A DNA stretch of 64,000 nucleotides from Takakia lepidozioides (taxonomy: Eukaryota > Plantae > Bryophyta), in the NCBI GenBank assembly GCA_030704615.1, contig CM060732.1:7502001-7566000 (forward strand), read 5' to 3'. Under the pieces are notes generated by a model. It saw only the letters and a program-made list of their open reading frames with translations. It had not been told where the DNA came from and searched no databases. Below are positions 3,001 through 56,700 of the stretch, piece by piece. The position numbers and the translations under genes are program-made. Within the stretch, counting starts at the first letter, position 1. Every line of letters begins with the position of its first letter.

Positions 3001-6000
3001 ACTTAGAGGCTGTAGTGTCCAAAGCCATGTCTGTTACCATGAGATTGTCTGATGAAAATGAAGTTAGGCAGAAAACTTCCCTGAACTTGTTTCCAGTCGT
3101 GACATGGGGAGGACATCTTGGATGACCTCAAGGGTCTACCCACTCTCGGCACTAGACTGAAATTTAAACTCAGGGCAGGAAGCCTACCTTTGAACAGCAA
3201 ACAGAAGCAGAGAGGAAAGGGAGAGTGCAATTGCCCGTTGTGTGGGCAACCTGAAGACAGTATTCATTTTCTGATATACTGTCCGGGGTTCTCTCACCAA
3301 AGAGACGCTCTCGTCAAATCTATCAAGGGAATTGTGCCTGTACCTCTGTTTACCAACTTTGAAAGTCTCGAGGCTGAGCAAAAAAGCCCAGGCCCTCCTG
3401 AGGCCTAGTTATTGGGCAAATCGCACACAGCAGATTGATGCTTGTGTGAAGGGATTTCTAGAGGATATCTGGAAAACCCGGATTAATTCTATATATGAAG
3501 GTAAGTCTTACTACCAACGTCAGCCCCTGACAGAGGTAGGTTCTGTCCCTTTTGTTTCCGCTCAAACTGGGCGCGGGGTCATGGCCACAAGGCTACGGCA
3601 AACAACGTCTTATGAGTACAATCTCTCCCTCCCTTTCTCCGCCAAGGCCCCTCCCTACATTCTTTCCGGCTGCTAATGTAATCTCTTAACATGTCAGATG
3701 TGTACGTGGATGGCAGTGTGAGGCTGTGGGGAGGGTTGCAGACATTATTCAAATTCCAGCCTTCTTATGCCGGCAGGTTGTGAGCCCCCTCTTTCATCGA
3801 GTTCAGAGTCTAGGGTTTTCTCCATTATAACATGGTGTTCAAGTTCTGAAAGTTTTCACTGGAAGCATGCAGAGATGTATCCTCTCCCAAACAAAAAGTG
3901 GAGAGACTGAAGATTCTACATTTCACAGAGTGGGATGTTGCTTCTTTCTCACTGCTCCATGTGCTGGTGAACATGGTTGCAAGATTGTTGGAGTGGTTAC
4001 TGAACAAATCTCTGTATTTCTTCTCCCCGCCTTCTTATTCACTCAAATTCCACTGTGCCTTGCTGTGGCATTTCCCGAATTACTGAAGGGTGATTTGCAC
4101 ATTGCAGACAGACCTCCTGGTGGCCGCTGCAAAGACAGGAAGAGTGATTAACATAAAGAAGGGCCAGTTCTGTGCCTCCTCTGTAAGCCATCTTCCATAC
4201 TGTATCGTCATTTTTGAAATGCTTTCACTGACTTATGTAAGGTTTGTAAAAGTGAAGCTCCAGCAATGGGTGCAATTCCAGTTGAGGCAGTTGACAGGAA
4301 ATGCCTTTGCAAATGATGTAGGCAAAATGAATCTGGAGTCTTGCCTTCGCTTGGTTTTTTAATGGCTTCCTCAAGGACAGAAACACTAAGTTTATTTGGA
4401 TGGACACTGTAAAAATTAAGGATTGCTTGCATTAACCATGGTGATTTGTTGTTATTGCATTCAAATTTTCAGTTGCATTATGGTAACATTGCCTCTGTTG
4501 TGTATGCAGGTTATGGCAAATTCTGCAAACAAGATCAGGTTGGCAGGAAATCCAAATGTGATGGTGTGTGAACGTGGCACCATGTTTGGCTACAGTGAGT
4601 TCTGCACTCTCTCTCTTGGTTTGGAGCCTGAAGAGTACCAAGTGTGATATTTGTTCTTTGTCAAGTGGTTTGTTCTTTGTCAACAAGGAGCTGCAACTGG
4701 GTTGAGGCACCAATTTAGACCAGCAGCAAATTTCCATGTGAGGCTGTCGTACTGGTTGATGACTTTTTTCCACTCGGCTCTTCCTATTCAGAGCCAGCTC
4801 AAAGACGTTTGGAACTATCAATCACTAATTCAGAACTGTCTAAAAAGCATTCAACGCCATTTGCAAGCACCAAGCAACAGAGGCAGCATAATCTGGTCTG
4901 GTAACTTCAAGGCTGTTGTGACTTCATCTTCAGTTATAATAATAAGTTACCCACCAGTTTTTTAATCCTGTGCAGACGATCTGATTGTTGATCCTCGCAA
5001 CTTAGAGTGGATGAGAGAAGCCAATGCCCCTGTGGTGAAGTAACTTAACCCAGATTTTCTTGTGTGACTTCTGTTTGATTCTTCAGCTTCACTAGCTTTT
5101 TGTCCTTGAATCACCATGTCCAACTTTTCTGTCAGTTTAATAGAAAGCAGCTTCAATCACAACAAGTTTTGTATCTGTACTATGAAGACCAGCCTTATGG
5201 TTCTTCTATAGTTAAGGGTTCAACTTTAAGATGATTAACATGTGGCCAATCTGTTTGCTCCTTTACCGTCAGGTCAGGTGGCAAAGGGACTCAGAGGTGC
5301 TACAGAATGGCTTGAATTAATTATATTTTCGAATGTCTTTGATACGTGTGGGAAGATAGCTATATTGTAATGGCAGATGTCACATGTGAAAAGAACTGTT
5401 TCCTGCAACCGTGTGTAGGTGGCTGATCTAACTCACTCGCTGCAACAACCAGCTGGCAAAAAGGTATGCTTCATCCACGAGATCAGGTCTCCTGCCTTGA
5501 CCTCTTCTCCTGTAATACGCTGGTCTTTTTAGCCGGTAGGTTGTGTAATTTCGGTGGTATTTACTGATGTAAGAACAACTCAAGTAGTTTTCAAGGTCTC
5601 ACTCCCTTCTGAAGGTTTTTGGTTGGTATTGATCTGCAAGAACTTGACTAAAACTGTGTGGGCACCCCAATATGACAGTTTTTTCTCTCGTGGTTGGGAC
5701 AGCTTGAGGGGGGTGGTGTGGCAAGTGGAGGCTTGCGTGAGTTGATTCCTTGTGTTGCTCGGACATGTGTGGCAGTCGGTGTTGATGGTATTTTCATGGA
5801 GGTTTGTCTGGAGTCGCTTGCCTCATTCTGTTATTAGTGAAATAGAGTGGATGCTAACGTGGCATTACATTATATGAAGAAACCCCAAATAATTTGTCTT
5901 TATATTACACTCGGATGGCAGAGTGTTCAAAAATCTGTTCCGTGATGGAATCATACCTGGTTATGTCAAAAAATAATCTTGTGGCTTCGGGGACTGACTA

Positions 6001-23947: not shown

Positions 23948-24670
23948 CGCTGAATTCTGCTTTTTAACCGCACGATAGATACAAAGAAAATTTTGTGGCA
24001 GTGCTGAGAATGATATGAGAAATTTGAGGGGTGAGACAGATGGGTGGAGAGGGCAGAAAAGGCGGTGGTGGTGGTGGTGTGGAGCAAAGTGGGAGGGAGC
24101 AGACAGCAGCAGAGAGAGATCGGCGAATGGTCGCAAGTTGATGAGGAGTATTTAGTACGAGGGGGATAAAATCGCCCAAATTAGGGGGGCATGCCTAACG
24201 GGTCGCTTGCCCGTGCATGCATGCCTGCACGCGTCATGCGCTGGCGCCACGCCACGGCATCCCATGGCCATGGCCATGGAGCGGCCTGCCCGCCCGCGCA
24301 CGTGCGGGAGGGTGGGCAGCCGGCAAGCCCCGCGCCATGCGGTCGCCACAGCGGGGAGGCTATCCGAAGGTTGTCCGGGGCCGCCCGCTGCCCGTGGCCG
24401 CGGGCGGGGCAGCCCGGTCGCCTGGCTGGTTGGGGCGTGGCGCGGTCTGCGGCGGGGCCAACAGCGGCAGCAGCGCGGCTGCAACAGTGGGAGGGGGTGG
24501 GTGCCGGCTTGCGCACAGATTGCTGGAAGGGCGCTTTGCATCGGTGCATGCAAACACGGGGCGGGATTAGCAGGAGGAGCAAGGGTGGTCGGGAAGGAGG
24601 GTGTGGTGTGTGGGAGGCGAGCAAGGGGGGTGCTGGGGGGGTGGGGCTGAGGAGGTGTTGAGAAAGAGAA

Positions 24671-24701
24671 GGGGGGGGGGGGGGGTGGTGGTGTGGGTGG
24701 T

Positions 24702-24732
<31 letters not shown>
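24671..24732 (+). repeat. Poly-G tract (G15 and G31 separated by GT/GGT units) upstream of the DRB coding exon
   Basis: Directly visible. Exact run lengths may be unreliable in the assembly. Confidence 0.9.
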
Positions 24733-24733
<1 letters not shown>

Positions 24734-24989
24734 GTGGATTGGATGGATTGTACATGGTGGCAGAGACAGGTAGGTGGGCTGCTCATGTGGTGAAGGCTGC
24801 ACCTCATTTAGGTGCCGTTCTTCTGGCCCAGAGGTGAGTGGCTGTGGTGTTGAAGTTGGGTGCTTGGATGTAAGATGAGGCCTGAGGCCCCAATGTGGAA
24901 TGAAGGGCGGGGTGGGAAGAGGGGGGTGAGGGGATGCAGTTGAAGCTGACAGTGGGGATGTTGGCATGTTGTTGGGATATGTCACAGGT

Positions 24990-26947
24990 ATGTACAAAAA
25001 TCAGCTTCAAGAGCTCGCTCAGAGGAGCTGCTTCAACCTCCCTGCCTATGCATGCATCAGAGAAGGGCCTGACCATGCGCCACGCTTCAAGGCCACCGTG
25101 AACTTCAATGGGGAGGTTTTCGAGAGCCCTAATTACTGTAATACCTTACGGCAGGCTGAGCATGCTGCAGCAGAGGTGGCCCTTAACACATTATCTCGAA
25201 GAGGACCTTCACAGTCCCTGGCTTTTAGAATTCTTGTAAGTCGTCTACTTTCTAAGGCAGCTGGATGCCGTTTGTGTACGTCCTAGTATCTCTTGCTCTA
25301 TCGCTTGCGGTGTCGACAGGCTCAACGGTTGTGATGTGTGTGGATTGGTAGTTGAAGTTGTCAACGTGGGGATGCAGGATGAAACAGGGGTGTGCAAGAA
25401 CTTACTTCAGGAAACAGCACAAAGGGCAAGTGTGTCGTTACCTGTTTATACGACTACTCGATCAGGACCTGGACACTTGCCTGTCTTCACATGCTCGGTT
25501 GAGTTAGCAGGCATGACTTTTCCAGGAGAGGCAGCCAAAACTAAGAAGCAAGCTGAGAAGAACGCAGCCATGGCTGCCTGGTCCGCTCTCAAGCAATGTA
25601 AGCCCAAGCCCGTGACTTACTAGTCCTGCTAGTGGCCTGTTTGGGCTTTTTATTTAGGTCTTACCCCACGTCAATGACATGAGTTTGCTCCTTCATTTAC
25701 ACTTGCAAGTATCAACCTTTGCCCATGTATGTAGGTCCCTTTTAGTCAAGCTTGCTGATACGGGTATGAAACTGAAGGTGATCATATGGCTCCATTGTAC
25801 TGAGCCTTGTGAAATCAAAGGCTCAGCCTTGGAACCATACACACTCGTCAGTGGGTACCAGTCGTTTAGTGTTGATGGTCCCTGTACTTGGCTAGGCTTC
25901 CAAATATTGGCACGAAATGTAACAAGGGCTTCGACTTGCCCAACCTGTGTCGGGCATGTGCGATAGCGTGCCGGAATAAGTGTTTCTGTTTTTCTGCTGA
26001 TGATCTCTTATCCTCTCATACATGAAGCTGCAGTGGGATTGATTTTAAGTAAGCTCACATTGATTGATGTGGCAGTTGCGAATCAAGGCCGGTCCACGAC
26101 ACCAATGCTGGAGTCGGAAGTGAGTGAAGAGCAAGAGCAGAACACCATAGCACGGGCACTGGCCAGTGCTTATGGCAAGGAAGTGCCACCGTTGTGTCAA
26201 CCTGGACAGTCTCCTGTGGGGTCGTCCTTGCCAACACCGGCAGCCAGGATCAGAGTGGTGCCAATGAGGGAAGGAGGGCAGGGAACAGCAGGTGCCATGG
26301 GGCAGTATCATTCAGGGTCGTGGCTGCCTGATATGGCTGTTGATTCAGTGCAAGGGCAACGGTTTCTGCGGACTCAGCATCTTAGTACTGTCTCAAAGGC
26401 TGCACCAGGATGCAGGTCAATGGGTCCACCTCGTGCAAGTTCCTCAGTGACTTTGCGCGACGTGTCTGGGAGGTCGCGGGAAGCACTAACAGCCAGTAGG
26501 GCAGCAGCTGGTGGTATGGGTAGCATGAGCCGAGTGGCACCTGTCCAGTTGCGCAGTTTGCAACGCAGGGATCGGCATGAAGTGCCACTACCTCTGGACG
26601 AGCACCAGCGGGATGAGGATGAGTGGCTTCGGGGTGACACCCCCAAATCAAACACAGAGTCAGACAAGAGTAGTGACAGGAGTGAGACAGATCGGGGCTC
26701 TTCGATGCTACATGGCTCATATAATTCTATGGCGTGGTCAGCAGGCTCCTCACAGTGGTGGAGCATGCAGTCGTTGGCTATGACGAGGCTGCCAGCAGGC
26801 CAGGTCCCACCAGTGCGGGTGCGCCAAATGGTAACAGTCCATGCTGCACCGCCTCCTCGCCGCCCAGCACCAGCAGAAGATCCTGATAATGAGGCAAATG
26901 AGGGAGAGGCAGCAACACGCAAAGTACTCAGCCAGCTGAGCCTTTGA
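24990..26947 (+). CDS. DRB2: Double-stranded RNA-binding protein, DRB2/3/5 clade (2 dsRBMs plus disordered tail)
   Basis: Exons 24990-25235, 25378-25597, 26076-26947. MYKNQLQELAQRSCFNLP..GPDHAPRFKATV..AEHAAAEVAL and DETGVCKNLLQETAQR..KKQAEKNAAMAAW. An acceptor at 24985-24987 implies an upstream (UTR or short coding) exon. Confidence 0.95.
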
Positions 26948-29679
26948 AATTAAAGGGTGCCTCTGGTTTATGCATTGTGATATTTGGGGTATGCCTTAAA
27001 TTGGCATGACGTGCCATCTCTCTGGATGGATGGTCCACACGCTTTTTCTTCTGCTGGGGTGGATATCGCATCCTTTGAGATGGGAGTGTCTGAAGAGAAA
27101 GAACTCTCTTGGTAGGCATATATATATACTCTTTGTAGAGGGCACGTTCCATCCCATGGGATTGTTATTACGTACGCTGGGTTTTACTGCCAGTCTGGTT
27201 GGGAATCCCATGGGATGGCACGGTTCAAGGGCCTCCAGGATGTTAAAGTCTGCTATTCTCTATTTAGGTCATTGTTGATGTGATGATTTATGTTGTAGCA
27301 GGTTCTTTGTGAAATAAGATTCTTGTTATGCATCTTTTGTGCACTCACCCACTTTGAATGGTGACCCTGGTCTGTGACGTTTACTCTTAAGGTAGATGCA
27401 GCATCTTTCCTCTCTGGGACGCATGGAGAGGGGCTGCATTTTGCAGGTCACTTGTGGTCTGCTTGAGCAGCTGGTGACCATGCTCTTGAGCAACCCTGCG
27501 AACATGTCCTGGTTTGTTTGACATTTTCAGAAGGCTATGGAGCCCGCGGGGTTGTTTCTATAAGCAATGTTTGCTCTAAGTGTGGTTTTTTTCACGTGTC
27601 ATGTGGAGTTTGTCAGCAAGGCATCTGTTTGCTGAGTTTCATCTCTTTTTGGCTGTTCAGAGAATTCCGAGTTTACTTATGGTGGATGCCCTGTTTTTCA
27701 TTTAATGAATTGGAGGTTTTTGGTAATGTGGGGGCTTTCTTCGCTTTTCTACCCATGTCCTTGTTACTCTCAAGTGTCGGCAGTGTAGAAGCCAATGTAT
27801 TTTGAGTCTCAGTGAGATCTGCATGCATTGAAGGAGTGTTATGTACATTAAGGGGGGTGAGTCTGCAGGAGGGAATGTCAGCAAGTACCAGAGGTGGGGA
27901 GGTGGGAAAGTGTAGAGAGAGGGAATGGGGTTGGAATGTAGAGATGGGGCGTGGATTCCCTGTAGTGAGGTGGTCCAAGTTCTCTCTGAAACAGAATCAC
28001 AACAAGCACTAGATCGTAGGGGCACGAAGGGGATGGGCTTGGGCACATTGCCCACCCCGCACATGGCTGCAGTAGTGTAGTGTGGGGAAACTTTCTTTCC
28101 ACAACAGAGTTGAACTCTGGGAGGGGAAGAGGTAATGTAGAGCTACCTCAGGGTGTCTAGATGTGACCTTGGAAGATGTGACCTTGGATCACATCTTGTT
28201 ATTCCATTCTGGATCTTGAGTTCAGTGCTGTCAATGAAATTCCCTTTGCTGCAAAGATAACGTGATATGAGTCAATAAGAGTATTAGAGGGAGAAATATC
28301 GTCTGCTGAATGTGACATTTGCTCCTTTTGAGCATGTTAGAAACATCAGAAGCAGCAGAGTGGGATGGAAGAGGGAGGCAAGGATGGACGGAAGGAGGCA
28401 ATGGGTCTGTTGTTGACTTGGCCATGGGTGTTGCGGGGGGTGGTGTCGTTAGCCACCTACCGCGGGCGGGCCATAATGGGCCATGAAGGCGGCAAGGGCA
28501 GGACGGGTTTAAAGCCCACAGCACGTTGGCCCACGCGCCCCAATCAAAGCCCCTCTTACTTAGGGCCCACTTTCCCTTCCTTCAACTCCACTGATCCTCA
28601 CCATACCACAGTAATAAGCTCGTGAGGGATATGGGTCTTCTCATTTGTTGAGGTGGGCGCAATCAGGGCTTTGACACGAGGTGACCTTCCCCTGTTCCAT
28701 GGAGTTGTTTATTATCTCTTCACATTCATTGCCCGGGTGCCCCATGTGCTGATTCATTGAACTGAAGCTTCTCTCTCTCTACTGCTCAATCAATGCAACT
28801 ATTTAAATACACCAAGTGAGTCACATGCGTACTAGTGCTAAACTTGGATGACTGGTGTTGTATGTGCAAACATTAGTACCTGCAGCCTTCAAGTCTCATT
28901 ATTTGTTTACTCTCCTCTTTGCTTCTCAATTAATCAACTTGACAACTTGTTACACCAAATGAAGTGACCCCAACTTCCAAGCGTACTAATTCAGGTAACT
29001 TGTTGTGTGATTAAATACCCCACAAGTGCTTCAAGCTTCACATCAGTGCATTTAATTTCTGATTTAGGAATGCGATCGGTACACTTGATTTGCAATTGGC
29101 TGTCAGATTTTTTATTTTTCTTTTTATTGCTGACATCCAGGCTCTTGGATGACTTGACAAGTTGTTTTCTAGCCTCTCATGTGTCCCAAAGCAAACAGGT
29201 AACTTACCCCTACTCCAAATGAAGATGGAGGTGGTTGTGACACCCAGTTGTTGGGTTGGCTATCATCAACTAAGTTATTTGGGACCAATTTCATTTTGCT
29301 ATCCCAATATTTTGTGAACTTTGTGACAGACATTAGAAAGGACAGGCCTCACTTTGTATGATGGCCGATACCGGGCCATTTATGTATGCCTGCAGTCAGG
29401 CAGGCCCAGAGAGGTGTTAGTGGACACGAAGTCATCACCAAACATTAAGACCTTTCCACTAGGAACGGTAGATGAGAACTGGGTACCGCCCAGTAGTTAT
29501 AGCTTTTGATGAAGACTGTGGGTGAAGTTGGCTATATTTACTGACAATGAAGGTTAGGCTAGTTGAGTTCGAGACATTCATCATCCCTCACAAGTCAAAA
29601 ACAGGAAAGGCTCCCAGAGCATACAGCTGATTAGCAGAGATTAGCATGTTTTCTGTTCATCCGGACTCGATCCGCCAAT

Positions 29680-31974: not shown

Positions 31975-34900
31975 TCATTGCCTGTGCACACTAGGACATA
32001 ACTGTCTTCCGCCCAGTAAGCTTGAAAAATTTCTTTGTAGGCGTAAGACTGCATCTCTCAAGTTTGATGTCACCTCCAAGATGCTTCTTGGAGCAGCAGT
32101 ACACAAGAAAAAAGTACTAGCAACAGAAATAGAACTAAAGGACTGGCCTTCGAAGTGATGACTGCCACCTGCCTCTCTGCGTGCAACTAACGATGGCATG
32201 TCTTTTCCAGATGCCGGCACAGTATTTTGGTTGTTCGCTTGGAAGTGTACTGCTGAATTACAAGAATAAAAATCCAATGTTTCAACCTCTTGCTGTGCAC
32301 TTGAGCTAGCCAGACCGCCTGTTGGATACCCCTTTCTTCCCGCTCTTCCTGTAGCTTCCAACATCTTCACAGCCTCCCAGTTGTTCATGGCCGCATATTC
32401 ACTCAGAGGTTCAGGCTTTTCTGTGGAAGACAAAAATATAGACTTCCCACCAAGCACAGTTGCTCTTTTCCGTCTGATAGCAGCATCCAAAAGGATATCT
32501 TTATTTTGCTGCTTGGTTGCGAGGTTTCTGCGAACGGTTCTGCGGTGCAGCTTCACAATGTCACCTGTAGCTCTAACAATGCGCCTTCCCCCCTTCTTCT
32601 GACCCCAACTTCTGACCATGAATGTTTCAGGTCTATTAGGGAATGCCACCTTGGCAGGTACGTGATCATATAATTCAAGCTGGTCATAGGGGAGCGCCTC
32701 CTCTGGGTGCACCCGAGTGCCTTTAGCTTTAAAAGGGTGCCTCGTATCCTTGTGCATGCTCGCAGATGATGAAAATAAGTTGGACGCATCAGCCAAAATT
32801 CGCAGAAATGGCAGGAGAGATGCTTGTTTGTTCCTTTCTCCTGCCCTGGTCTGCACCAATCCCACCCACAGTGTCCTCACTCTTTCTTCCCCTACAAAAC
32901 CTTGGAGTAATTGCGATACTACTTGTTGCTCCCTACCCAGTGCAGGGTAAATTGATAGACATTACATTGCAGTTGGAAATACCCCCTGATTTCCCAGGGT
33001 GTGTTTGCTGATGGTTAACTGCATGTACCCATATCTAGGTGGAAACCCTAGTTACTCCGTTGGTCCCATTTAACGAAAGGTCGACAAGAGTCCTTACCGG
33101 ACCAAATAAAGATGAGTAGCAGAAGATAGAGAAGTGGCCAAATTTTTGCAATGCAAGTGCCAGCTGTTGCTGATGGAGCCAGCTGTCCCCAAATTCAACA
33201 CTGGTTCCCATAATAATTGCTGGTGCTGGTAAGCGAGCCCACCCCTCCTCCCTCACATCCTCCTTCACCAACTGTACAGGAGCCCTCCGTTGCCCATGTC
33301 TGCTCCTCTGTCTGTCCCTGTGACACAACACACCAACCTCTTTGTCAAGATAAGTCTGCAACATGTTTGCTCACACAATGCAATCATTATGTCGCACACT
33401 AAGCAGAGGGAATCAGGAAAGCTCTCTGTATCAGCATAGAGCCATGTATTTGCCCACACCTCCTGTTCTTCTTCATTTTCAACAGAATAACTAAAATGGA
33501 CTGCTCCTGCCTAAACTAAACCGTCCAAATCATGTGGTCGTAGCCAAACAGAGAGAGAAGTCCTTGAAGAATTCGAACAGGTGAGTGTCTACTTGCACCA
33601 ATGGGCACTAGTGTCAATCAAATTCTTCATCTGACAAGTCATTGCAGTATTTCTACAGTAGAATAAGCAACAGGGGGGGAAAAGTCAGTGCCAAGCAATT
33701 TGCCTGTGAGTCTTTGTGTTGAAAGGGGGACAGGTGTTTCTGTCCGCATCATTTCTCCAATCACACTCCACACGCCTCCGGAAAGTTTTGTGACAGCCAG
33801 TGTAATTCATAGGAACCACAGCGTCTAGCAGCCTCTCTTTCCACCATTGCTCAACGTCCTACATCCGTCATAATGTGTCTGGTCAAAACTCCTTCTCAGG
33901 CTTGCATCTCTATCTGTAAGAGCACTACCACACATACTGAAAACCTGCTAGTTAGGAATGCTCATCAGTCTCCACAAAGTTTAGTCATCTCACTTCCATC
34001 CACTTTCCTACAACTACCACTATTTCAGAGGAATACCACCCACTTTCCTAAAATGTATGAGAACATGTCATCATCAGGTCAAAAACTTCCAGCCTGCACA
34101 TATACAGAATCTTTTTGGATGCTGAAGCAGGAGGAACAGGGAAGAGGAAACCAACTTGAAATTTTCTTAGAGCTTGATTTCGCTCAGCACCAACTGCGGC
34201 AGTGAGGACCAGCTGGGGGCGCAAGGACTTAGCAGTACGCCGAATGTCACGCAGCAGCGCTGTAACACAATCACACCGCCACTGGTCCCATACCTCACGG
34301 TTGTCATCAGGAGCCAATCCAGTGTCCACCTGGTAAAGCTCCATTGTCCTCTGAAATGCACACCCCCATCCCACCATGCTGTAGCCTCTGCAATATGTAG
34401 CTCAAAATTATGAGATGATTAGAATTTGGTACTATCACAAACATACACACTAAAAAATGCTGTCAGCACCATCCTGACTCCAGGTAGGCCCTGTCTGCAG
34501 TTGGAGATGATGCTCAATCAATGGAGGCCTCAGTATGAAGAGGGGGCTCGATGGGTGACCTGCAAACTGCAACAGCAAAAGATACCTGAGCTTTCGCACC
34601 TTGTCCCTGGGGTACTGATGGCCATGCACAACAGGGTGCTCATTTGGAAACCGGATGTAGTCAAGATGCAACCCATCAACCTCATAGCCTGACACGATCT
34701 CCCGACAAACGCCCACAATGTGCTTTCTTGCTTCAGGCAAACATGGATTTATGCTGACATAGAATCCCCTGTTTAGTGGCTGCAGGAGCATAATCCACAT
34801 CCCATCAGTGGTCCAACCACAAACCAAGCTACAGATAACTCCAACAGCGACACAAATTTGTCTAGCATCGTGCGAAACAACAGAAGGGGTGATCCATGCT

Positions 34901-36339
34901 ACCACATTTGAGTTAGAACAGGCAGAACCTGGCGGACACCACGGTGATCGTACCAGCTCCACTCTGGACGACGCCAGTACATGTGGTTTGGGTTTGTTGG
35001 GGGATGTGATCCCCTCCACAAGGGCATCACTGTCATCAACCTTCCTCAATTCAGAATGCGTGCCCCCCTAGCTCGCAAGCTTATGAAACAATGTTTGAAA
35101 AGACATTGTAATCGCATGGGAATGAATGATTGCGTCCTGATGTTACGAGAGCCTTGATGTTGCAGTGCTAACAAACAACTGTAATTCCTTCCCATCAATC
35201 ACTTATTGCTTAGAAAAAGAGTTCTAAACCTCAAGGCTTCACCACAGACAGCAAGGCTGACAGTTTTACACCACCGAAGAGCCGTTCATTCACAATGAGC
35301 AGAGACAGCTTTGAATACCCTCAGCTAGCAGGCATGCATTCCCCTATCCTATCATTCTTTACGAACGTGTTGCTACATATCAAGACCCCGTTATGCGACC
35401 GTAGCCTTGTAAAGTTGCATAACTCTCAATGGATCAGAAATAGGGATGAAGATATAAACTCTGAGGGTCGTTCATTCACCCCTGCCATACTCGTCCAAAC
35501 CTGATTTTGTTTCAAATGACCAAGGTTCCAACAGATAGCCAGGGTGGCACCCAGGCGACACTCTAAGTGCTCACAGCTATGTTGGAGGTTCAGGTTGAAG
35601 GGCCACCCAGCCACGCAAAATGTCTCTGAGTTTGATTACCTTGATGATCACAATAAGCCCCCTAGCATTGGATTGCAAGCTCTGCTCAGAGTCATCCTTC
35701 ATATGTCCTACACGCCCCCAAGAAAGTAAAGACAGTTACCGTTTATCCATGCGTGCAGGGCCATGTTGTGTGCATGAGCTTCACCAATAGCAAGTCGAAG
35801 TGGGTCAAATCCTGGGTTCTTCCACCCATAACATTCACTCCACGGCTCCGACTTTGATTCATAGTAAGTGCTTCCATTCCCCCGCACCTGCTAACCAACG
35901 GCGTCTTCCCCTTAGTGAAAACCTTGGCTTCTCAGAAGAATCAAAGTGCAATCACTCAAGCGAAGGAATAAATGCCTCCTAATCATACATTTGCACATGC
36001 TACTCCGACTCAGGCAGAGATTGCGGACCTACGACCTGGAAAAAGACAGTATTAAAGCCCGCTTGCGCCGAGCGCTTCATAACGTTCGCAATGTCGGCAT
36101 CAGTGTGGAAATCATAGCGCGTCAGCCACACTGCTCTTACTTGATCCCCGTACCTCTGCACCATTCCCATAATTCCTCCCCTTCAATAACCCTACGACCT
36201 CAGTTTGATCTGGCCTCAATGCAGTTACACTTGAGATCAACAAATTGCAAGGAAAAATCCCGTCGAGACTCCGCCTGAAGGAGCACTTCTGCGGACTCCA
36301 TCGATAACCAAACTTCTCTAATCCAGTCCTCAAGGACAT
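31975..36339 (-). CDS. Glycoside hydrolase-like family 10 (GHL10 / DUF187, YddW/DigH-like) protein with long C-terminal extension
   Basis: Well-supported exons 36155-36036, 35887-35740, 35029-34929, 34779-34600, 34350-34156, 33858-~33704, 33355-33098, 32850-31975. They give VRAVWLTRYD..AGFNTVFFQVRGNG..YES..EPW..PGFDPL..EAH..LHAWINV..RPEW..INPCLPEAR..YEVDGLHLDYIRFP..WDQWR..LLDAVVPMNY..FSIFCYSSL. The first exon (36339-36229) and a small exon near 33459-33505 (needs a GC donor) are tentative. Confidence 0.88.
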
Positions 36340-37643
36340 TATTGACCACCGATCAACAAGTACTTGTATAGATCCCAAAACCCATCCATTATACAGCGCT
36401 ACTACTACAGACAGATTGTGGTGAAGGGAAATAACCAGGGACCCACCAGATTAGGAAGTCGGCCCTCCCGGCGAAACGCAGGATCTTCACCCTCCACGGG
36501 TGACAACAGCGCCGGACACAGGGTGGAGGTCGTGGATCTCAAAGGCTGGGCAGAAGGCTCCATGGCTCCAAAGTGCAATCAATCGAGCGAAGGAATACTG
36601 CACATCATGACACCAAATTGCTGACTTCCTGCAGATTGCAATCAAACCAGCGTTGTGGAAGCGCATAAATCTTTTCCACAACTCTGTTTCTTCAGCAATT
36701 ACTTTGAAAACATCAGCCTCAGGTGCACGCATGCAAAACGACGGCAATCAAGAAGGGGCATGGAAACACGCCATCTTGATTGAGGTGGGTTGCAACCCAA
36801 CCCACTGATGCAACCTATCTCTACTCACTGCAATGAGAAGACCCGGTTTCCACACCTTAGGGCCCCCATAGCTAAAAGACTGTGTCTAGATCCCACACTA
36901 GTACTCTGAAGCTTGAGCGAGGACATGCTCATCCAGCTTGCAGATTCGCAAGCGACAAAGATACTAATTTTAGCAGAGATTGCGTGCACTGCGTTCTTTA
37001 GATTTCCGATGAGGTGTACATATCCACTCAAGTTCAAGAAAAAGGGAAAGGTTGAAGAATCTTTGCGGACCCTGTGGATTTGGGGGCTGGCATCCCCGCT
37101 CTAATCGTTTGCATACCAAGCCTCATTATTGCGATAACATTGTTTACCTCTCCACGAATCTTCGCATCCAGACAATCGATAGTTCCGATCTGATGGGGTG
37201 GATCTGAGAATCGGTTGGATAGTCTCTGGTTCGTTGACATTGGGGATCTTGTGCATGTGGGTGTGGGGTTCAACCCCAGGTGGTCTCGTCTCATCTGCCT
37301 TGGGGGCTGGGCTGGGGCTCTGTCCCCCCTCAATGCCCAAAACAGAAACAATCAAAAGGGGAAAAAATCTCACAATTTCCAACACTTTTCTAGTAGGCAC
37401 CCAAGTAAATTTTCTTCTGTGTTGGAGGTGAGAATGAACGTCATGATCATCACAATGAAAGCCTTTTCCAGGGGTGGGTTCCGCATACCTAAGGGATTTT
37501 GCCTGCCTAATATGGAGTATTTCCCGGAGGATTAAAAAGCAGAAATCTACGCCTCATGCCACTAGCACATTATGCCAGTTGCACTAGCATAATGTGTTTG
37601 ATTAGGACTGGCAGCCAATGAGAGGGCGGCAGACTCAATCCTT

Positions 37644-41387: not shown

Positions 41388-43282
41388 TCAATATCTCTTA
41401 GCATATGAGCAAACTACAGCCGATGGTGGGGCATCCCAAACATCCCATTGCTGCTGAAAAGCTTCTAATTCTTGGATGCATTCAGCTACAGACCTACTTA
41501 AGAATCTTCTTCTACAATCAGCAGATTCAGCTCCAACTGTTCCGTCATAGACTTCTTCCCAATGTGGTCCCCACCCACCTTGGGCATCACAGAGGTCTAA
41601 CCCCTCAACAGGTCCAGGCCAACCCCAACCCTTGTCTAGCCCATTCATAATTGCCCGTGCCTCTGCTCCACTGGCCTTGGGAGTGCAAGGTCTGCATTTA
41701 GCTCCATTGAGAGGTCCCTTGCTTCCAATTGAAGCTACTGGCACGGACCACGTAGTTGGAGGCCATGAATACCTTCGATAGCTTAGTACACAAAAAGGGA
41801 GCTTATTGTATTTGAAAGGTATACTGGATACACTGAGCTGCATCTTGAATGCTGTCTCTGAGTTAAGGCCTCTATGACCCCGATTGTGAATCAAATGTAG
41901 TAACCTCAACCTTGCTAATGCAACCCAGCTAGTATTTGAGTTGCCAATGCCAAACCTGTCATTGAGGCCACCATACTGAGAACCATAAGGAATATGATAG
42001 AAGTTTGGATTGAATGATTTCAGAGGTGGTAGTGGTCCACTCCAGTAGCCATCCACTCTTGTCCTGATAATCCACTCGTACTTGATGTTGTGCTGGATCT
42101 CATATTTTAGTATCATGTCCAGGCATCCTTCCACCAGATTGAAGTACTGCAGCAGGCCCTGTGGTCCATGCATTCCAGGTGTTAAATTCTCAGCTTGAGT
42201 CCTCAACATTGGTCACAATGTATGTGCATAGGCATTGGAGTTGCGAGTGTGTAGTGTGAAGGGCTTTCTCTGGGAAGCCTGTGCAGCTGCTGTATCTCCC
42301 TGTCATGGTTGTTCCCTTTTTCATTAAGATGTGTTTAGTCTATTTCTATGTCCACAGATGCATAGCGTAGATCATGGTCTGCTGGGAGCAAAAAAGATGG
42401 TCACGACTCTCCTACATTCACGTTGCAGATGAAAATGTGGCTGATTCATTATAGATACTGGAAGCTCACAGAGACAGGAGTAGTCTCACATAACACAAGA
42501 CATTGAAAAGAGAGCCTAGCCCGACCTTGCTCACAGAACCGAGGGAGTTTATTGAACAGTCATTTGAAGAACACGGTACTGAACCAGTAAGACGCACCAA
42601 CAGTGTGCTAATTAATACCTGTATTCCATTTGGCGAACCTGCACCAGTAAGAACTTCTCGTTGAATATCGGACTCTGGCACATGTCGAGAAATAAATATG
42701 CGTGCAGCAGCGAGATTGGAAGCCCCTTTCAGCAAGGTGAATTTGTGTGTATTTCCATCTAAAGGAGAATGTAGAAACACATCTGTGTCGTTGTAAACAT
42801 TCAACAGATACTTCTTGATCGTCTCCCCGGTCAATTCAAAGGAGCGTGCTGCCCCAACCAGGCAAACTGCCACTTTTCCTGTCCCATACTGTTGGGCTTT
42901 CGGACGTGCTGCATCTTCACACCGATGCAAGCTCATTACTTGATCCTGATCCTGCGACGGCACGGAGGGACGATAGTCAACACGAACCCAACAAAAACCA
43001 CAAAACCACAAACCATTCAGACGATTCTACGCACCAAACGTTCAAACGCAATCTGAGGAACAATCAGCCTCCAACCTTATTTCCAAGTCCTCCTGCAGCT
43101 TCCCCATGAACGTAATTGGTCAATTGAGATTGCCATGAACTTATGTGTAAGAAAGTTATTTGCGAGAGAGGCTCCCAAGCTGGCAACCAGTGACTGAAAA
43201 ACGCAGTGCAGGCTATGAAGAAGCCCACCGCCATCAAGCGCACGATCCCTCCCCCTCTGTACACAGACACAAACCCGGCCAT
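41388..43282 (-). CDS. Conserved plant protein of unknown function (DUF7796-like), N-terminal membrane anchor
   Basis: Exons 43282-43076, 42951-42619, 42158-41388. Motifs VAVCLVGAARSFELTG, SPNGIQGLLQYFNLVEGC, WIIRTRVDGYW, YGGLNDRFGIG, GPLNGAKCRPC, recognised from a conserved land-plant family. The DUF number is from memory. Confidence 0.88.
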
Positions 43283-53709: not shown

Positions 53710-56700
53710 ATGACGGTCACCGACTGTCGCATGTATGAGGCTCGTTATCCGGAGGTGGACGATGTGGTCATGGTTCAGGTCCGTGATGTTACAGTGTGGA
53801 GGTGATTTCATGTGTGTTTAATGTACAAGGTTGATCAAAATCTTGATGTGGTCTGGTTCACAGAAAACTCAAGTAAATCGGCTTAAGATCATACATTTTT
53901 CTTGTCACAGTCTATTCGTCATGTTAATAGACCCAAATTCATCGGTGCAGGTTAAGAACATTGCAGAAATGGGAGCGTATGTTGCACTCCTGGAGTACAA
54001 CAACATTGAAGGTATGATTCTGCTTTCAGAGCTGTCCCGGCGCCGGATTCGCAGTATCAGCAGCCTTATTAAGGTAGGTCGGCAGGAGCCAGTTATGGTT
54101 CTGAGGGTGGATAAGGACAAAGGTTATATTGATCTCAGCAAGCGCCGTGTCTCTGAAGAAGATGTGGCGGGCTGTGAAGAACGCTACAATAAAAGCAAGC
54201 TCATTCACTCCATTATGCGCCATGTTGCTGAAACCATGGAAGCTGATCTTGAGGTAGGGCTCTTTGCAGTACATATTTTTTTAATGTAAAACGCCATTTC
54301 TATGTGCTGCATCGAAACAATTTTTCTCTCTTGGGCAATCTGAGGTGTTTGCTTAATGTGACAATTAGGTCAAAACACAGTAGTTAGGTGTGGGGCTTGC
54401 ATGTCAACTTCACTAGTTTAGTAATTTGTCGGACTCCAATTGGCAACTATAGAGGCCTTTAAGAGTGGTACACCTGCTGTTCTATGACTCAAATGCTTGC
54501 AATCCTCTGCAGAGAGATATCACCTCAGGGTTCCAAGTGGGCTCGAGCTCTTTGGTTGTCTTAGAAGATGTAAAAATGTTCAGATGTACAGTTTTTCAGT
54601 CCCAGACCGGGGGCTTGCAGCAATGCATTCTACTAAAAATAAGGCAAAGTGGTGCTAGCCTTAAACTAATACTGGGCACCCTTTTCATGGCCTGGGGAAA
54701 CAGGATCTATATACACACGTAGCCTGGCCTTTGTACAGAAAGTACGGGCATGCATTTGAGGTGGGGCATCCTTCAATTTTAAGTAGTAGTGTCATATAGG
54801 ACTGAACTTCTAAGTTGTTTGTTATGCTTTTATGCCAAGACCTGAGTGGCTGTTGATCCTGCATGATCAGTTTTCCTTCTTTTGTGCAGTTATTTGCCCT
54901 CATTGTAACCAGCTTCGCTGACCTCAAGAAATGCAGTGACTACCTGCAAACCCATCCATATATATCCGTCCTATCTCTCCTTAAAGAACTCCAACACCTT
55001 TCCCACTCCACCCCCCACACCCAGCCACCCTAAACGCTACTAGGCACCTACCAGCATTTAACCACCCATACATTCAACCCCCAGACCCCGTCTCCCCCAA
55101 CTTCCCCCACCCCTCCCACCAATGGACCTTGCTCACCTGACAACCCACACTGCCTATCTCCCACCATTTGGAATCTTGGATCCATCTCCACCAGCATCCC
55201 CAGTCTAGCACACATTCTCACAGATTCACACCCACCCCTGCAGTTTGCTGTCTATCTCTTCAGGGTTTCTGCAGTTTATGTGGCTCTTTATTTCCTTACA
55301 TTTTGTTATGTTTTGGCCAGATTCCAGTTTGTGTTTTCTTCATTTGAATGTGGAGGGCTGGTTGGTGTGGAGGGCAGGCATTCAAATTGATAGTTACAGA
55401 TCCAGACTTGGTGCTCAGTGGACTCACCAAGGAAGTGAAAGAGGCAGGCCCAGATGGTCAAGAGGTGGGTATAGGCATCACATGGTGGTCGCTTCATGAA
55501 AGTTCTGCTTTAAATGTAAGAAGTTTGTAAAGCTGATCTGTATGCACATGTCAATTGTGCAGGTAACTAAGGTAGTGCCAGCCATGACTGAGGAGGTGAA
55601 GGACTCTCTCATAAAAAACATCCGGAGGCGGATGACTCCTCAACCCTTGAAAATTCGTGCTGATATAGAACTGAAGTGCTTCCAATATGATGGGGTCCTT
55701 CATATTAAGGTATGTTGTTCATCACCCCCTAGTTTCTAATTTTTGCCAGAGGGAGTGACTCTTCTGCTGAAGGACAACATGCGTAGAGGGATGACTAAAG
55801 GGATGACTCTGCTGCAGGATGCAATGAGGAGAGCAGAAGAGGCCGGTACTGAGGAGTGCCCAGTGAAGATAAAATTGGTGGCCCCGCCCCTCTATGTTCT
55901 TACCACGCAGACACTGGATAAGGTTAGTGGTCTTTGTTTCCTCTGGTGACATGTACAATGGAAGCCCACTGAGCAAATGTTCGGGTGCTGATGATTTCTG
56001 CTATAGCGGACATTGGTCTTCCCCCCACCATTACCTCCTCCTTGTCTTGACTGGCCCCTGGTTGCTGATGGGAGTCGGCAGAAGTATTCTGCTTGTGATT
56101 TTAAGTGATGCTATGGTTTGTTTCATAACATAACCTATTGTGCTTGATGCTGGTGATGTACTAGTTCCACTGTATGTATATCAAGAAGGAAAGCTTGGCC
56201 TGGATTAAAACGTTCTTTGTAAAAGGCATGCACTGGAAATATGCATCACCATTCATGTGTGAATTTATTGTTTGATGTAGCAGTGGCTGCAGCCAGAGGA
56301 AACCAAAATAACTCTATGTTAAGTATGGATGCATTCTCATGTCTAGTGTGGGACTGGCAGGACTTGGGCATAACAGTGTTGGAAGCCGCCATCAAAGCAT
56401 GTGTGAAGGAAATTGAGAAACATAAAGGAAAGCTTCTGGTGAAGGAGGCTCCTCGCGCGGTGCCTACCCTGTTCCCCCTTTTTGTTTTCAACCTCTTGCT
56501 GCAGTACTTTCCGCTGTACATTGCTAGTCAAATTCTTAGGTTTGGTAAATGTTGGCGGTGAAAATTTGCTAGTTGCATTATCAATTGTGAACAAATTAGC
56601 CATTGTTTTTTCTGGTACCGTAATATTGGTGTCTACTTAATGATTTCAGGTGAGTGAGAGGGATGACCGACTTCTTGCGGAGACAATGCAAAAGCTTGGG

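What the first reader, a model, noticed from the sequence alone, without database searches (positions are those of the whole stretch)
31975..36339. Intron-containing bacterial-type GHL10 (YddW/DigH-like) glycoside hydrolase in a plant genome
Seen: at least eight in-phase exons rebuild a full GHL10 TIM-barrel (RAVW, GFNTVFFQVRG, EPW..FDPL, LHAWIN, NPCLPE, VDGLHLDYIRFP, PMNY) with no disabling mutation, between ordinary plant genes. It is therefore a domesticated nuclear gene, not contamination. Known: the family is mainly bacterial, E. coli DigH/YddW cleaves denuded septal peptidoglycan, and non-seed plants such as Physcomitrium keep plastid peptidoglycan. Inference: it came by horizontal or endosymbiotic transfer and may be a plastid-division peptidoglycan hydrolase or act on symbiont/cell-wall glycans. 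The tentative first exon (MSLRTGLEKFGYRWSPQKCSFRRS..) is S/R-rich, like a transit peptide.
Basis: partly seen in the sequence, partly recalled or inferred. Interest (0 to 1): 0.82.

Follow-up and report, generated by a model that had tools for sequence, protein, structure and literature searches.

The report
Moss gene for bacterial-type wall-glycan hydrolase
This is a real, intact, nine-exon moss nuclear gene for a bacterial-type (GHL10/DigH-like) sugar-chain-cutting enzyme, acquired long ago from planctomycete-like bacteria, and it is an untested candidate for trimming the remnant bacterial wall around chloroplasts, although it has no chloroplast-targeting leader.

Summary
Observation confirmed, with corrections. 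A minus-strand gene of nine exons (36563 to 31975, about 711 codons) has canonical GT-AG introns and no stops. It encodes a GHL10 TIM-barrel domain plus a roughly 290-residue C-terminal extension specific to streptophytes. The real start is further upstream, and the N-terminus is short.

Orthologues occur in Marchantia, Riccia, Ginkgo, Spirogloea, Mesotaenium, Klebsormidium, a prasinophyte-like alga and, fused to LysM, Cyanophora. None came from a flowering plant. Marchantia shares at least six of the eight junctions.

The green-lineage proteins form one clade nested among Planctomycetota/Phycisphaerae proteins, not named cyanobacterial ones. This fits ancient horizontal transfer followed by vertical descent.

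In three of eight planctomycete loci examined, the homologue sits in a murQ, sodium-solute-symporter, GHL10 operon, with muramoyl-alanine amidases nearby in others. That ties the subfamily to MurNAc-containing glycan, meaning peptidoglycan.

A role on plastid peptidoglycan is therefore plausible (about 0.45). It is weakened by the lack of any signal or transit peptide, which an orthologue mRNA confirms.

No RNA reads could be obtained for this window. The spliced model was never joined; exons were searched singly.

Earlier scan notes report other peptidoglycan genes in this genome, but not this one.

The parts
36447..36563 (-). Exon 1. The start codon is at 36563-36561, in GCCATGG context. The exon encodes a short N-terminus ending in the conserved motif EDPAFRRxGRLPNL.
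   Evidence: tblastn: the Met of orthologue P0165 aligns to 36563, and Marchantia, Ginkgo and Spirogloea align to the motif. An in-frame stop lies five codons upstream. The GT donor follows 36447.
36036..36155 (-). Exon 2. Start of the GHL10 barrel (RYGDQVRAVW ... GFNTVFFQ).
   Evidence: 67-79% identity to orthologues. GT-AG junctions are fixed by junction peptides.
35740..35887 (-). Exon 3 (VRGNGS ... EPWS ... FDPL ... LHAWIN). It ends one base into a codon.
   Evidence: Pfam GHL10 profile 42-90, E 3.3e-6; tblastn; junction.
34929..35029 (-). Exon 4 (MPLWRGSHPP ... HPEWSWYD). It is in a frame different from the neighbouring long ORF.
   Evidence: tblastn 52-68% identity to all orthologues; junctions.
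34600..34779 (-). Exon 5 (PLNRGFYVSINPCLPE ... VDGLHLDYIRFP). It carries the Asp-Tyr active-site pair.
   Evidence: Pfam GHL10 profile 129-167. It aligns to Cwp19 5oq2. It is 66-84% identical to orthologues.
34156..34350 (-). Exon 6 (RTMELY ... WDQWRCDCVT ... LTAAVGAE ... KFQ).
   Evidence: Pfam GHL10 profile 175-227. It is 64-77% identical to orthologues. The exon has the same limits in Marchantia.
33732..33858 (-). Exon 7 (DVEQWWKERLLDAVVPMNY ...). The donor at 33732 is the only canonical GT that keeps the conserved end; the boundary is less sure.
   Evidence: tblastn; enumeration of donors and acceptors.
33098..33369 (-). Exon 8. It holds a variable linker and then the last barrel strands (PAPAIIMGTS ... 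FSIFCYSSLF). Both boundaries are less sure.
   Evidence: tblastn 54-70% identity; splice enumeration.
31975..32850 (-). Exon 9. This is the streptophyte-specific C-terminal extension of about 290 residues (LLPFLRILADAS, HPEE..PYDQL, a basic GGRRI..IVKLHRRT block, NWEAVKMLEAT), plus the stop codon at 31975-31977.
   Evidence: 33-40% identity over 170-270 residues to Ginkgo, Marchantia, Riccia, Spirogloea and Logan orthologues. No Pfam family. In the model of orthologue P0167 it is mostly disordered, with one helix, a hairpin and a long helix.
36112..36378 (-). It is not part of the gene's coding sequence.
   Evidence: It lies within intron 1 and overlaps exon 2 in another frame. No orthologue aligns to it.

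Best explanation
Shown: the locus is an intact nine-exon nuclear gene of a moss. It encodes a protein of about 711 residues made of a GHL10 (YddW/DigH/Cwp19 family) TIM-barrel glycan hydrolase and a conserved streptophyte-only C-terminal extension. The gene is old. It has been inherited vertically at least since the common ancestor of green algae and land plants. A single origin shared with glaucophytes is not rejected. Its nearest bacterial relatives are lipoprotein GHL10 enzymes of Planctomycetota/Phycisphaerae. Those bacterial genes often lie in operons with the MurNAc-6-phosphate etherase MurQ, a sodium-solute symporter, ROK kinases and muramoyl-alanine amidases.

Inferred: the plant enzyme still cuts the GlcNAc-MurNAc glycan of peptidoglycan. 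It would work on the plastid peptidoglycan layer during plastid division or turnover, as DigH does on denuded septal glycan in E. coli. It would act beside the amidase-activating M23, MltB and carboxypeptidase activities already proposed for mosses.

Not explained: how a protein with neither signal peptide nor classical transit peptide would reach the space between the plastid envelope membranes. The conserved N-terminal motif or the C-terminal extension would have to provide targeting.
For: Gene reality:
- Collinear GHL10 hits.
- Nine open exons with GT-AG junctions.
- Marchantia locus L006 also has nine exons; seven were mapped and six of the eight junctions verified at the same protein positions.
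- All 52 columns conserved at 90% or more in a 66-row family alignment are kept.
- pN is 0.09-0.22 in exons 1-8 against saturated pS of 0.59-0.77 versus orthologue mRNA L009.

Fold:
- The AlphaFold model of the closest orthologue, P0167, has a barrel with pLDDT above 90.
- Its best PDB match is Cwp19 5oq2/5oq3, E 7e-24, TM 0.77.
- The Cwp19-type active-site positions W, Q, W, D-Y, S/T, Y, G and aromatic-Ser are present (PMC5765458).

History:
- Orthologues are listed.
- The green clade has SH-aLRT 100 and sits inside a clade whose every named member is Planctomycetota.
- The Cyanophora domain's best hits are also Phycisphaerae, at 51-61% identity.
- The AU test does not reject one eukaryote clade (p 0.745).

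Link to peptidoglycan:
- The family members DigH and Cwp19 cleave peptidoglycan glycan (PMC12288456, PMC6016235).
- A murQ (TIGR00274, 374-390 bits), SSF, GHL10 operon occurs in L013, L015 and L016.
- An SSF gene is adjacent in 6 of 8 loci, and Amidase_3 is adjacent in L012.
- There is an SSF::GHL10 fusion and a beta-lactamase-fold::GHL10 fusion, and the Cyanophora copy carries LysM.
- Every taxon found to hold the gene belongs to a lineage credited with a full Mur gene set, and no angiosperm appeared (PMC12681378).
Against: There is no export or import signal. The bacterial kin have an LxGC lipoprotein signal, and the plant proteins do not. The N-terminus is short, partly acidic and conserved. 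In an assembled orthologue mRNA, an in-frame stop lies three codons before the ATG.

GHL10 relatives are reported on other substrates: starch for DogH (PMC9967864), and sialic acid for the structurally related GH156.

E. coli DigH is only a distant outgroup of this subfamily.

No annotated orthologue was returned for Physcomitrium or Selaginella, although they keep plastid peptidoglycan genes. Co-occurrence is therefore imperfect or hidden by annotation gaps.

There is no RNA evidence for this window and no biochemical data for any plant or planctomycete member.
Confidence: 0.45

Rival explanations
1. The gene and enzyme are the same, but the protein does not act on the plastid wall. It is a cytosolic (or otherwise non-plastid) glycanase. 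It would work on soluble amino-sugar oligomers, such as muropeptide or chito-oligomer turnover products, or on an unrelated glycan.
For: There is no signal or transit peptide, and the short N-terminus is confirmed in an mRNA. The basic C-terminal extension has no known targeting domain. Substrate diversity is reported in and around GHL10 (PMC9967864; GH156 and PgaB as structural neighbours). The bacterial operons suggest sugar salvage rather than wall remodelling.
Against: The phyletic pattern follows lineages that keep plastid peptidoglycan and includes flagella-less Zygnematophyceae. The Cyanophora copy is fused to LysM. The operon partners MurQ and amidase point specifically to MurNAc glycan.
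Confidence: 0.3
2. The enzyme is aimed at microbes. It would degrade peptidoglycan of bacteria that associate with or attack the plant, for defence, signalling or nutrition.
For: The family cleaves bacterial peptidoglycan (PMC6016235, PMC12288456). LysM fusions are also typical of microbe-sensing proteins.
Against: There is no secretion signal. The gene is strongly conserved as a single copy with a fixed intron pattern for hundreds of millions of years, and it shows no family expansion. Loss in angiosperms is not expected for a general defence enzyme.
Confidence: 0.1
3. Rival on origin only: the gene came from the cyanobacterial ancestor of plastids by endosymbiotic transfer. Its resemblance to planctomycete proteins would then reflect later transfers among bacteria or uneven sampling.
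For: Cyanobacteria hold many GHL10 proteins (Atlas clusters; PMC6016235). One origin for glaucophyte and green copies is not rejected, which fits an event at or near plastid origin.
Against: In three searches, every named protein among the best 120 non-eukaryote hits is Planctomycetota/Phycisphaerae, and none is cyanobacterial. The tree nests the plant clade among these. The only two genome-collection loci found are Phycisphaerae MAGs.
Confidence: 0.12
4. The locus is bacterial contamination, a recent insertion, or a decaying pseudogene.
For: None beyond the bacterial affinity of the domain.
Against: It has eight spliceosomal introns, with junctions shared with Marchantia where they could be mapped. 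Plant genes and a retroelement flank it. It has no stops, keeps all conserved columns and has low dN/dS. The closest database relatives are plants at 65-86% identity per exon.
Confidence: 0.01

Closest known systems
Planctomycetota/Phycisphaerae GHL10 lipoproteins (annotated 'family 10 glycosylhydrolase' or 'YddW, UPF0748'); uncharacterised
   Same: They are the closest bacterial kin, at 42-54% identity over the whole barrel, with the same DGLHLDYIRFP, NPCLPE and PMNY motifs. The plant clade nests among them.
   Different: The bacterial proteins are about 400 residues long, with a lipoprotein signal and no C-terminal extension. Their genes lie in murQ-symporter operons. The plant protein has lost the signal, has gained a conserved N-terminal motif and a 290-residue tail, and is encoded by a nine-exon nuclear gene.
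E. coli DigH (YddW), a divisome-localised hydrolase of denuded peptidoglycan glycan
   Same: Same Pfam family and barrel. It is the proposed functional analogue (PMC12288456).
   Different: It is only distantly related. DigH scores 97 bits against the subfamily HMM, where the full-length kin tabulated score about 410-550. It is a long outgroup branch and has the DDY form of the active-site motif. This locus is not a DigH orthologue.
Clostridioides difficile Cwp19 (PDB 5OQ2/5OQ3), a GHL10 lytic transglycosylase
   Same: It is the best solved-structure match, both by sequence and by fold for the orthologue model (E 7e-24, TM 0.77). The equivalents of the conserved pocket residues are present (PMC5765458).
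   Different: Identity is 22%. Cwp19 has a signal peptide and CWB2 wall-binding repeats. The equivalents of its Arg132 and Gln295 are not clearly conserved in the plant and planctomycete subfamily.
Annotated but unstudied plant and algal orthologues: Marchantia MPTK1_3g10680, Riccia R1flu_005799, Klebsormidium KFL_006860060, Ginkgo Gb_36659, Spirogloea SM000056S17940 and Cyanophora tig00000169_g11892
   Same: These are true orthologues. They show 55-86% identity per exon, the same exon structure in Marchantia (nine exons, six of eight junctions mapped), and the same N-terminal motif and C-terminal extension within streptophytes.
   Different: The Cyanophora protein is 1305 residues long, carries LysM domains and lacks the streptophyte tail. 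Several gene models are truncated or over-extended.

Membership tests
Pfam GHL10 (PF02638, formerly DUF187) | Significant match to the family profile | tested here: met
   Three exons match collinear parts of the profile, at 26.9, 23.5 and 21.9 bits and E 3e-6 to 1e-4. As a fragment, each is just under the 27.9-bit whole-protein cut-off. The joined protein was deliberately not scanned. Full-length orthologues score 92-154 bits.
Pfam GHL10 (PF02638, formerly DUF187) | (beta/alpha)8 TIM barrel like Cwp19 | tested here: met
   This was tested on the closest orthologue, P0167, as a proxy and not on the window's own protein. Barrel pLDDT is above 90. The best PDB match is Cwp19, E 7e-24, TM 0.77.
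Pfam GHL10 (PF02638, formerly DUF187) | Conserved pocket residues named for Cwp19: Trp36, Gln77, Trp127, Asp196-Tyr197, Ser250, Tyr297, Gly328, Phe367-Ser368 | tested here: met
   The window has RAVW, FFQ, HAW, HLDY, TAAVG, PMNY, IIMG and CYSS at the aligned places (PMC5765458). All 52 family columns conserved at 90% or more are kept.
Pfam GHL10 (PF02638, formerly DUF187) | Equivalents of Cwp19 Arg132 and Gln295 | tested here: inconclusive
   In the plant and planctomycete subfamily the Arg lies three residues further from HAW, and the Gln position reads Met-Asn. The alignment here is ambiguous.
Pfam GHL10 (PF02638, formerly DUF187) | Cleavage of peptidoglycan glycan strands | not testable with these tools
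   This needs enzyme assays. It has been shown only for Cwp19 and DigH (PMC6016235, PMC12288456).
E. coli DigH/YddW orthologous group | Lipoprotein signal and export to the periplasm | tested here: not met
   There is no hydrophobic signal or lipobox. The N-terminus is short and conserved.
E. coli DigH/YddW orthologous group | Close phylogenetic affinity to DigH | tested here: not met
   DigH is a distant, long-branched outgroup with a different motif form, DDY.
Planctomycete-type GHL10 subfamily | Placement inside the clade, and the shared motifs NPCLPE, DGLHLDYIRFP and PMNY | tested here: met
   The tree of 134 domains and the tree of 48 rows place it there, and the motif alignment agrees. 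The window itself was placed by exon-level identity to the streptophyte clade, not as a row in the tree.
Nuclear-encoded plastid peptidoglycan machinery | N-terminal plastid transit peptide | tested here: not met
   The start is at 36563, only about 25 residues before a conserved acidic motif. Orthologue mRNA L009 has a stop three codons upstream of its ATG. No predictor such as TargetP was available.
Nuclear-encoded plastid peptidoglycan machinery | Presence only in lineages that keep a full Mur/PBP gene set | tested here: inconclusive
   The gene was found in a glaucophyte, a prasinophyte-like alga, Klebsormidium, Zygnematophyceae, liverworts, this moss and Ginkgo, with no angiosperm (distribution of Mur genes from PMC12681378). 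Against a clean pattern, no annotated Physcomitrium or Selaginella protein was returned, only the best 120 hits are listed, and genomes themselves could not be searched.

The most novel reading that the evidence does not exclude
This family would be the missing glycan-strand hydrolase of the plastid peptidoglycan wall. Under this reading, a planctomycete-derived gene was acquired before green algae and glaucophytes split. The host then recruited it to cut the endosymbiont's wall, and it was lost together with the wall in flowering plants. It would reach the envelope by a non-classical route, using its conserved N-terminal motif or its basic C-terminal tail. That would add a non-cyanobacterial, PVC-group gene to the host's control of plastid division.
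Probability: 0.3. Interest if true: 0.78.

Novelty: new variant of a known kind. Interest (0 to 1): 0.6.

Why it matters
Plastid peptidoglycan is needed for chloroplast division in mosses and is now argued for in gymnosperms. The enzymes that open or recycle its glycan strands are, however, barely known. This gene family is present from glaucophytes to Ginkgo and is automatically annotated but unstudied. No paper in the searchable library mentions it in plants.

Three results make it a concrete, testable candidate:
- Its bacterial kin sit in MurNAc-utilisation operons.
- It traces to Planctomycetota rather than to the cyanobacterial endosymbiont.
- It lacks a classical transit peptide.

It also adds to the evidence that the plastid wall machinery is a mosaic of bacterial sources. 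If localisation fails, the finding still stands as a well-documented ancient bacterium-to-plant gene transfer, kept under purifying selection for an unknown glycan function.

Tried and rejected
No reads were laid, and expression and splicing of this window's gene remain unshown. An assembled mRNA of the closest orthologue (L009) served as indirect support.
Exons were searched singly by reference, and stored orthologue proteins served as proxies for the fold, the tree and the domain scans.
- Genome-collection scan with the Marchantia protein: it gave only two loci, both Phycisphaerae.
- Cyanobacterial comparators: I tried to obtain named sequences through cluster look-ups and a plasmid tblastn (best 32% identity, in Priestia, Bacteroides, Deinococcus, Pantoea and Ralstonia). 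None was obtained, so no named cyanobacterial row is in the tree.
- AU test on the 134-row set: it did not finish in three runs. It was repeated on 48 rows.
- C-terminal extension: no Pfam family and no meaningful Atlas neighbour (score 0.75).
- Motile-sperm explanation for the phyletic pattern: rejected, because flagella-less Zygnematophyceae keep the gene.
- NCBIfam has no model that names the plant or planctomycete GHL10 protein.


Full report
**What is there.** Three exon-sized ORFs match Pfam GHL10 (PF02638) at collinear profile positions: 42-90, 129-167 and 175-227. The best solved-structure relative by sequence is Cwp19 of C. difficile, 5OQ2.

Exons were sent singly by reference, and stored orthologue proteins were used as proxies.

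A full HMMER scan of 1.84 billion representatives with the 205-residue ORF around exon 5 returned full-length relatives at 67-80% identity. These are:
- Riccia fluitans KAL2634320.1.
- Ginkgo Gb_36659.
- Spirogloea and Mesotaenium.
- A 1305-residue Cyanophora protein that adds LysM domains.

**Gene model.** tblastn of these orthologues, plus Marchantia MPTK1_3g10680, Klebsormidium KFL_006860060 and several transcript-derived proteins, marks nine collinear coding blocks. Scoring of junction peptides and enumeration of donors and acceptors gives canonical GT-AG introns whose phases add up.

| Exon | Coordinates (minus strand) |
|---|---|
| E1 | 36563-36447 |
| E2 | 36155-36036 |
| E3 | 35887-35740 |
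| E4 | 35029-34929 |
| E5 | 34779-34600 |
| E6 | 34350-34156 |
| E7 | 33858-33732 |
| E8 | 33369-33098 |
| E9 | 32850-31975 (with stop) |

The total is 2136 nt, which is 711 codons plus the stop. Each exon is open in its frame. Introns 1-6 are firm. Introns 7 and 8 lie in variable linkers and are the best canonical solutions only.

The real start is the ATG at 36563, in GCCATGG context with an in-frame stop five codons upstream.

**It is a genuine, constrained plant gene.**
- Neighbours include a plant-specific DUF7796 gene, a reverse-transcriptase ORF and an S1-domain ORF.
- The Marchantia locus (L006) also has nine exons; seven were mapped and at least six of the eight junctions fall at the same protein positions.
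- Added exon by exon to a 66-row alignment of plant and planctomycete proteins, the window keeps the consensus residue at all 52 columns conserved at 90% or more.
- Against the mRNA of the closest orthologue (L009), non-synonymous differences are 0.09-0.22 per site in exons 1-8. Synonymous sites are saturated at 0.59-0.77. The summed dN/dS is about 0.14.

**Protein anatomy.** AlphaFold on the closest orthologue, P0167, using the alignment, gives a confident TIM barrel over residues about 30-400 (pLDDT above 90). The N-terminus is disordered. The C-terminal extension is mostly disordered but holds a helix, a beta-hairpin and a long helix.

Foldseek ranks Cwp19 first (E 7e-24, TM 0.77). GH156 sialidase and the PgaB C-terminal domain follow.

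The pocket residues proposed for Cwp19 (PMC5765458) have counterparts here: RAVW, FFQ, HAW, the Asp-Tyr of HLDY, TAAVG, PMNY, IIMG and CYSS. The Arg132 and Gln295 equivalents are unclear.

The C-terminal extension (exon 9) is conserved at 33-40% identity from Spirogloea to Ginkgo. It has no Pfam family or Atlas neighbour.

**No targeting signal.** Bacterial kin begin with a classic lipoprotein signal (LxGC). The plant proteins instead begin 0-25 residues before a conserved motif, (C)PYE.EDPAFRRxGRLPNL.

In the assembled mRNA L009, a stop lies three codons upstream of the ATG. The same short start is seen in a second species, in L007 and L008. The transit-peptide reading is therefore not supported. 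No localisation predictor was available.

**History.** Searches with Ginkgo, the Cyanophora domain and the P0167 domain each list plant or algal orthologues first. After those, among named entries, they list only Planctomycetota/Phycisphaerae proteins at 40-61% identity. No angiosperm and no named cyanobacterium appears in the best 120 of any search.

A 134-domain IQ-TREE (LG+C20, quick search, DigH as outgroup) gives these results:
- Klebsormidium, Zygnematophyceae, the moss-like transcript, Ginkgo, the liverworts and P0008 form one clade with SH-aLRT 100.
- The branching order is roughly that of the species.
- The clade is nested in a group whose named members are all planctomycetes.

P0008 sits on an intron-poor, 67% GC, gene-dense eukaryote contig with ORC3 and HSP70. 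It is likely a prasinophyte-like green alga.

Cyanophora pairs with a protein whose cluster holds an MMETSP transcript. On a 48-row set, forcing all 12 eukaryote rows into one clade is not rejected (p-AU 0.745). That constrained tree even has the higher likelihood.

The simplest reading is one ancient transfer from a planctomycete-like donor into an early archaeplastid or green ancestor, followed by vertical descent and loss in flowering plants.

Caveats:
- The donor labels rest on MAG names.
- Cyanobacterial GHL10 proteins exist, but none could be placed in the tree by name.
- The tree searches were the 'quick' kind.

**Function.** Two family members are proven peptidoglycan glycan cleavers: DigH (PMC12288456) and Cwp19 (PMC6016235). 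Both are distant from this subfamily, so I looked at the gene neighbourhoods of eight planctomycete kin:
- Three (L013, L015, L016) have a tight same-strand operon of murQ, sodium-solute symporter and GHL10. The murQ gene passes the TIGR00274 equivalog cut-off at 374-390 bits.
- Six of the eight have the symporter next door.
- Two have a ROK kinase immediately downstream.
- L012 has an Amidase_3 gene adjacent, and L016 has a weak Amidase_3 signal in a neighbour.
- One relative is a symporter::GHL10 fusion, and another is a beta-lactamase-fold::GHL10 fusion.

A transporter-kinase-MurQ cluster is the known MurNAc utilisation module of Tannerella (PMC7670621). That its MurT belongs to the same symporter family is my recollection and was not tested here.

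This is guilt by association. It nevertheless points specifically to MurNAc-bearing glycan as the subfamily's substrate.

The remaining support for a role on the plastid wall is:
- The LysM fusion in Cyanophora.
- A taxon list that matches lineages credited with a full Mur gene set: glaucophytes, prasinophytes, Klebsormidium, liverworts, mosses and gymnosperms, but not angiosperms (PMC12681378).
- Retention in flagella-less Zygnematophyceae, which argues against a motile-sperm pattern.

Against it:
- The missing targeting signal.
- Reports of other substrates in and around the family (PMC9967864).
- The absence of annotated orthologues from Physcomitrium and Selaginella in the lists.

**Context from this scan.** Earlier, mostly unchecked notes call this genome a moss. 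They list other peptidoglycan-type genes elsewhere in it: MltB-like, M23, YkuD-fold and PGBD anchors. None of them covers this locus. I used them only as context.

**Verdict.** The gene is an ancient, vertically inherited, planctomycete-like GHL10 hydrolase gene with a plant-specific tail. A role on plastid peptidoglycan is the best single hypothesis (about 0.45), but localisation is the open problem.

No paper in the searchable library treats plant GHL10 proteins. The known moss peptidoglycan-hydrolase study (Utsunomiya et al., cited in PMC12681378) could not be read.

Noticed in passing
L013:2140-6200, L015:2135-6206, L016:2029-6182: Planctomycete genomes carry a tight operon of murQ (MurNAc-6-P etherase), a sodium-solute symporter of about 630-660 residues, and GHL10. 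It is often followed by large Golvesin_C/fn3 (and weak Amidase_3) proteins and a second GHL10 with a CarboxypepD_reg domain. It looks like an undescribed peptidoglycan/MurNAc scavenging locus.
   Followed up: partly
L007:6001-8094 (Logan SRR33208241, 19-kb contig): In another plant the orthologue (P0165) is an uninterrupted 697-codon ORF on a 19-kb contig. Its neighbours (Ras, CCDC39-like, IFT122-like) appear only as short fragments. This could be an intronless copy in a genome, or a chimeric transcript assembly.
   Followed up: no
P0009 (Cyanophora, 1305 aa) and P0358 (MMETSP transcript): The Cyanophora protein adds at least two LysM domains and a very long Ala/Pro/Arg-rich tail. Its MMETSP relative starts with MFFFNAF, which is reminiscent of the phenylalanine-rich start of glaucophyte transit peptides. 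This was not tested.
   Followed up: no
window 24000-28000: A GC-rich stretch (0.51-0.57, against about 0.45 around it) has strong positive GC skew (up to 0.26) and long overlapping ORFs on both strands (24152-24997 minus, 24191-24661 plus, 26000-26947 plus). None has a Pfam match. It remains unexplained.
   Followed up: partly
window 1422-3125 (+): A 567-residue ORF has a reverse-transcriptase domain (RVT_1, E 4.5e-25). It is a retroelement remnant or copy.
   Followed up: no
window 41388-43011 (-) and 53831-54289 (+): The upstream neighbour is a two-exon plant DUF7796 gene (E 8e-107 and 2e-34). Further on there is an ORF with an S1 RNA-binding domain.
   Followed up: no
window 36563-36447 and orthologue N-termini: Most streptophyte orthologues (not Klebsormidium) keep a cysteine in an L-(L)-C-P context within the first about 25 residues. 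This is just where the bacterial kin have their lipobox cysteine, though the spacing to RAVW differs. Whether it is a relic or a lipidation site is unknown.
   Followed up: partly
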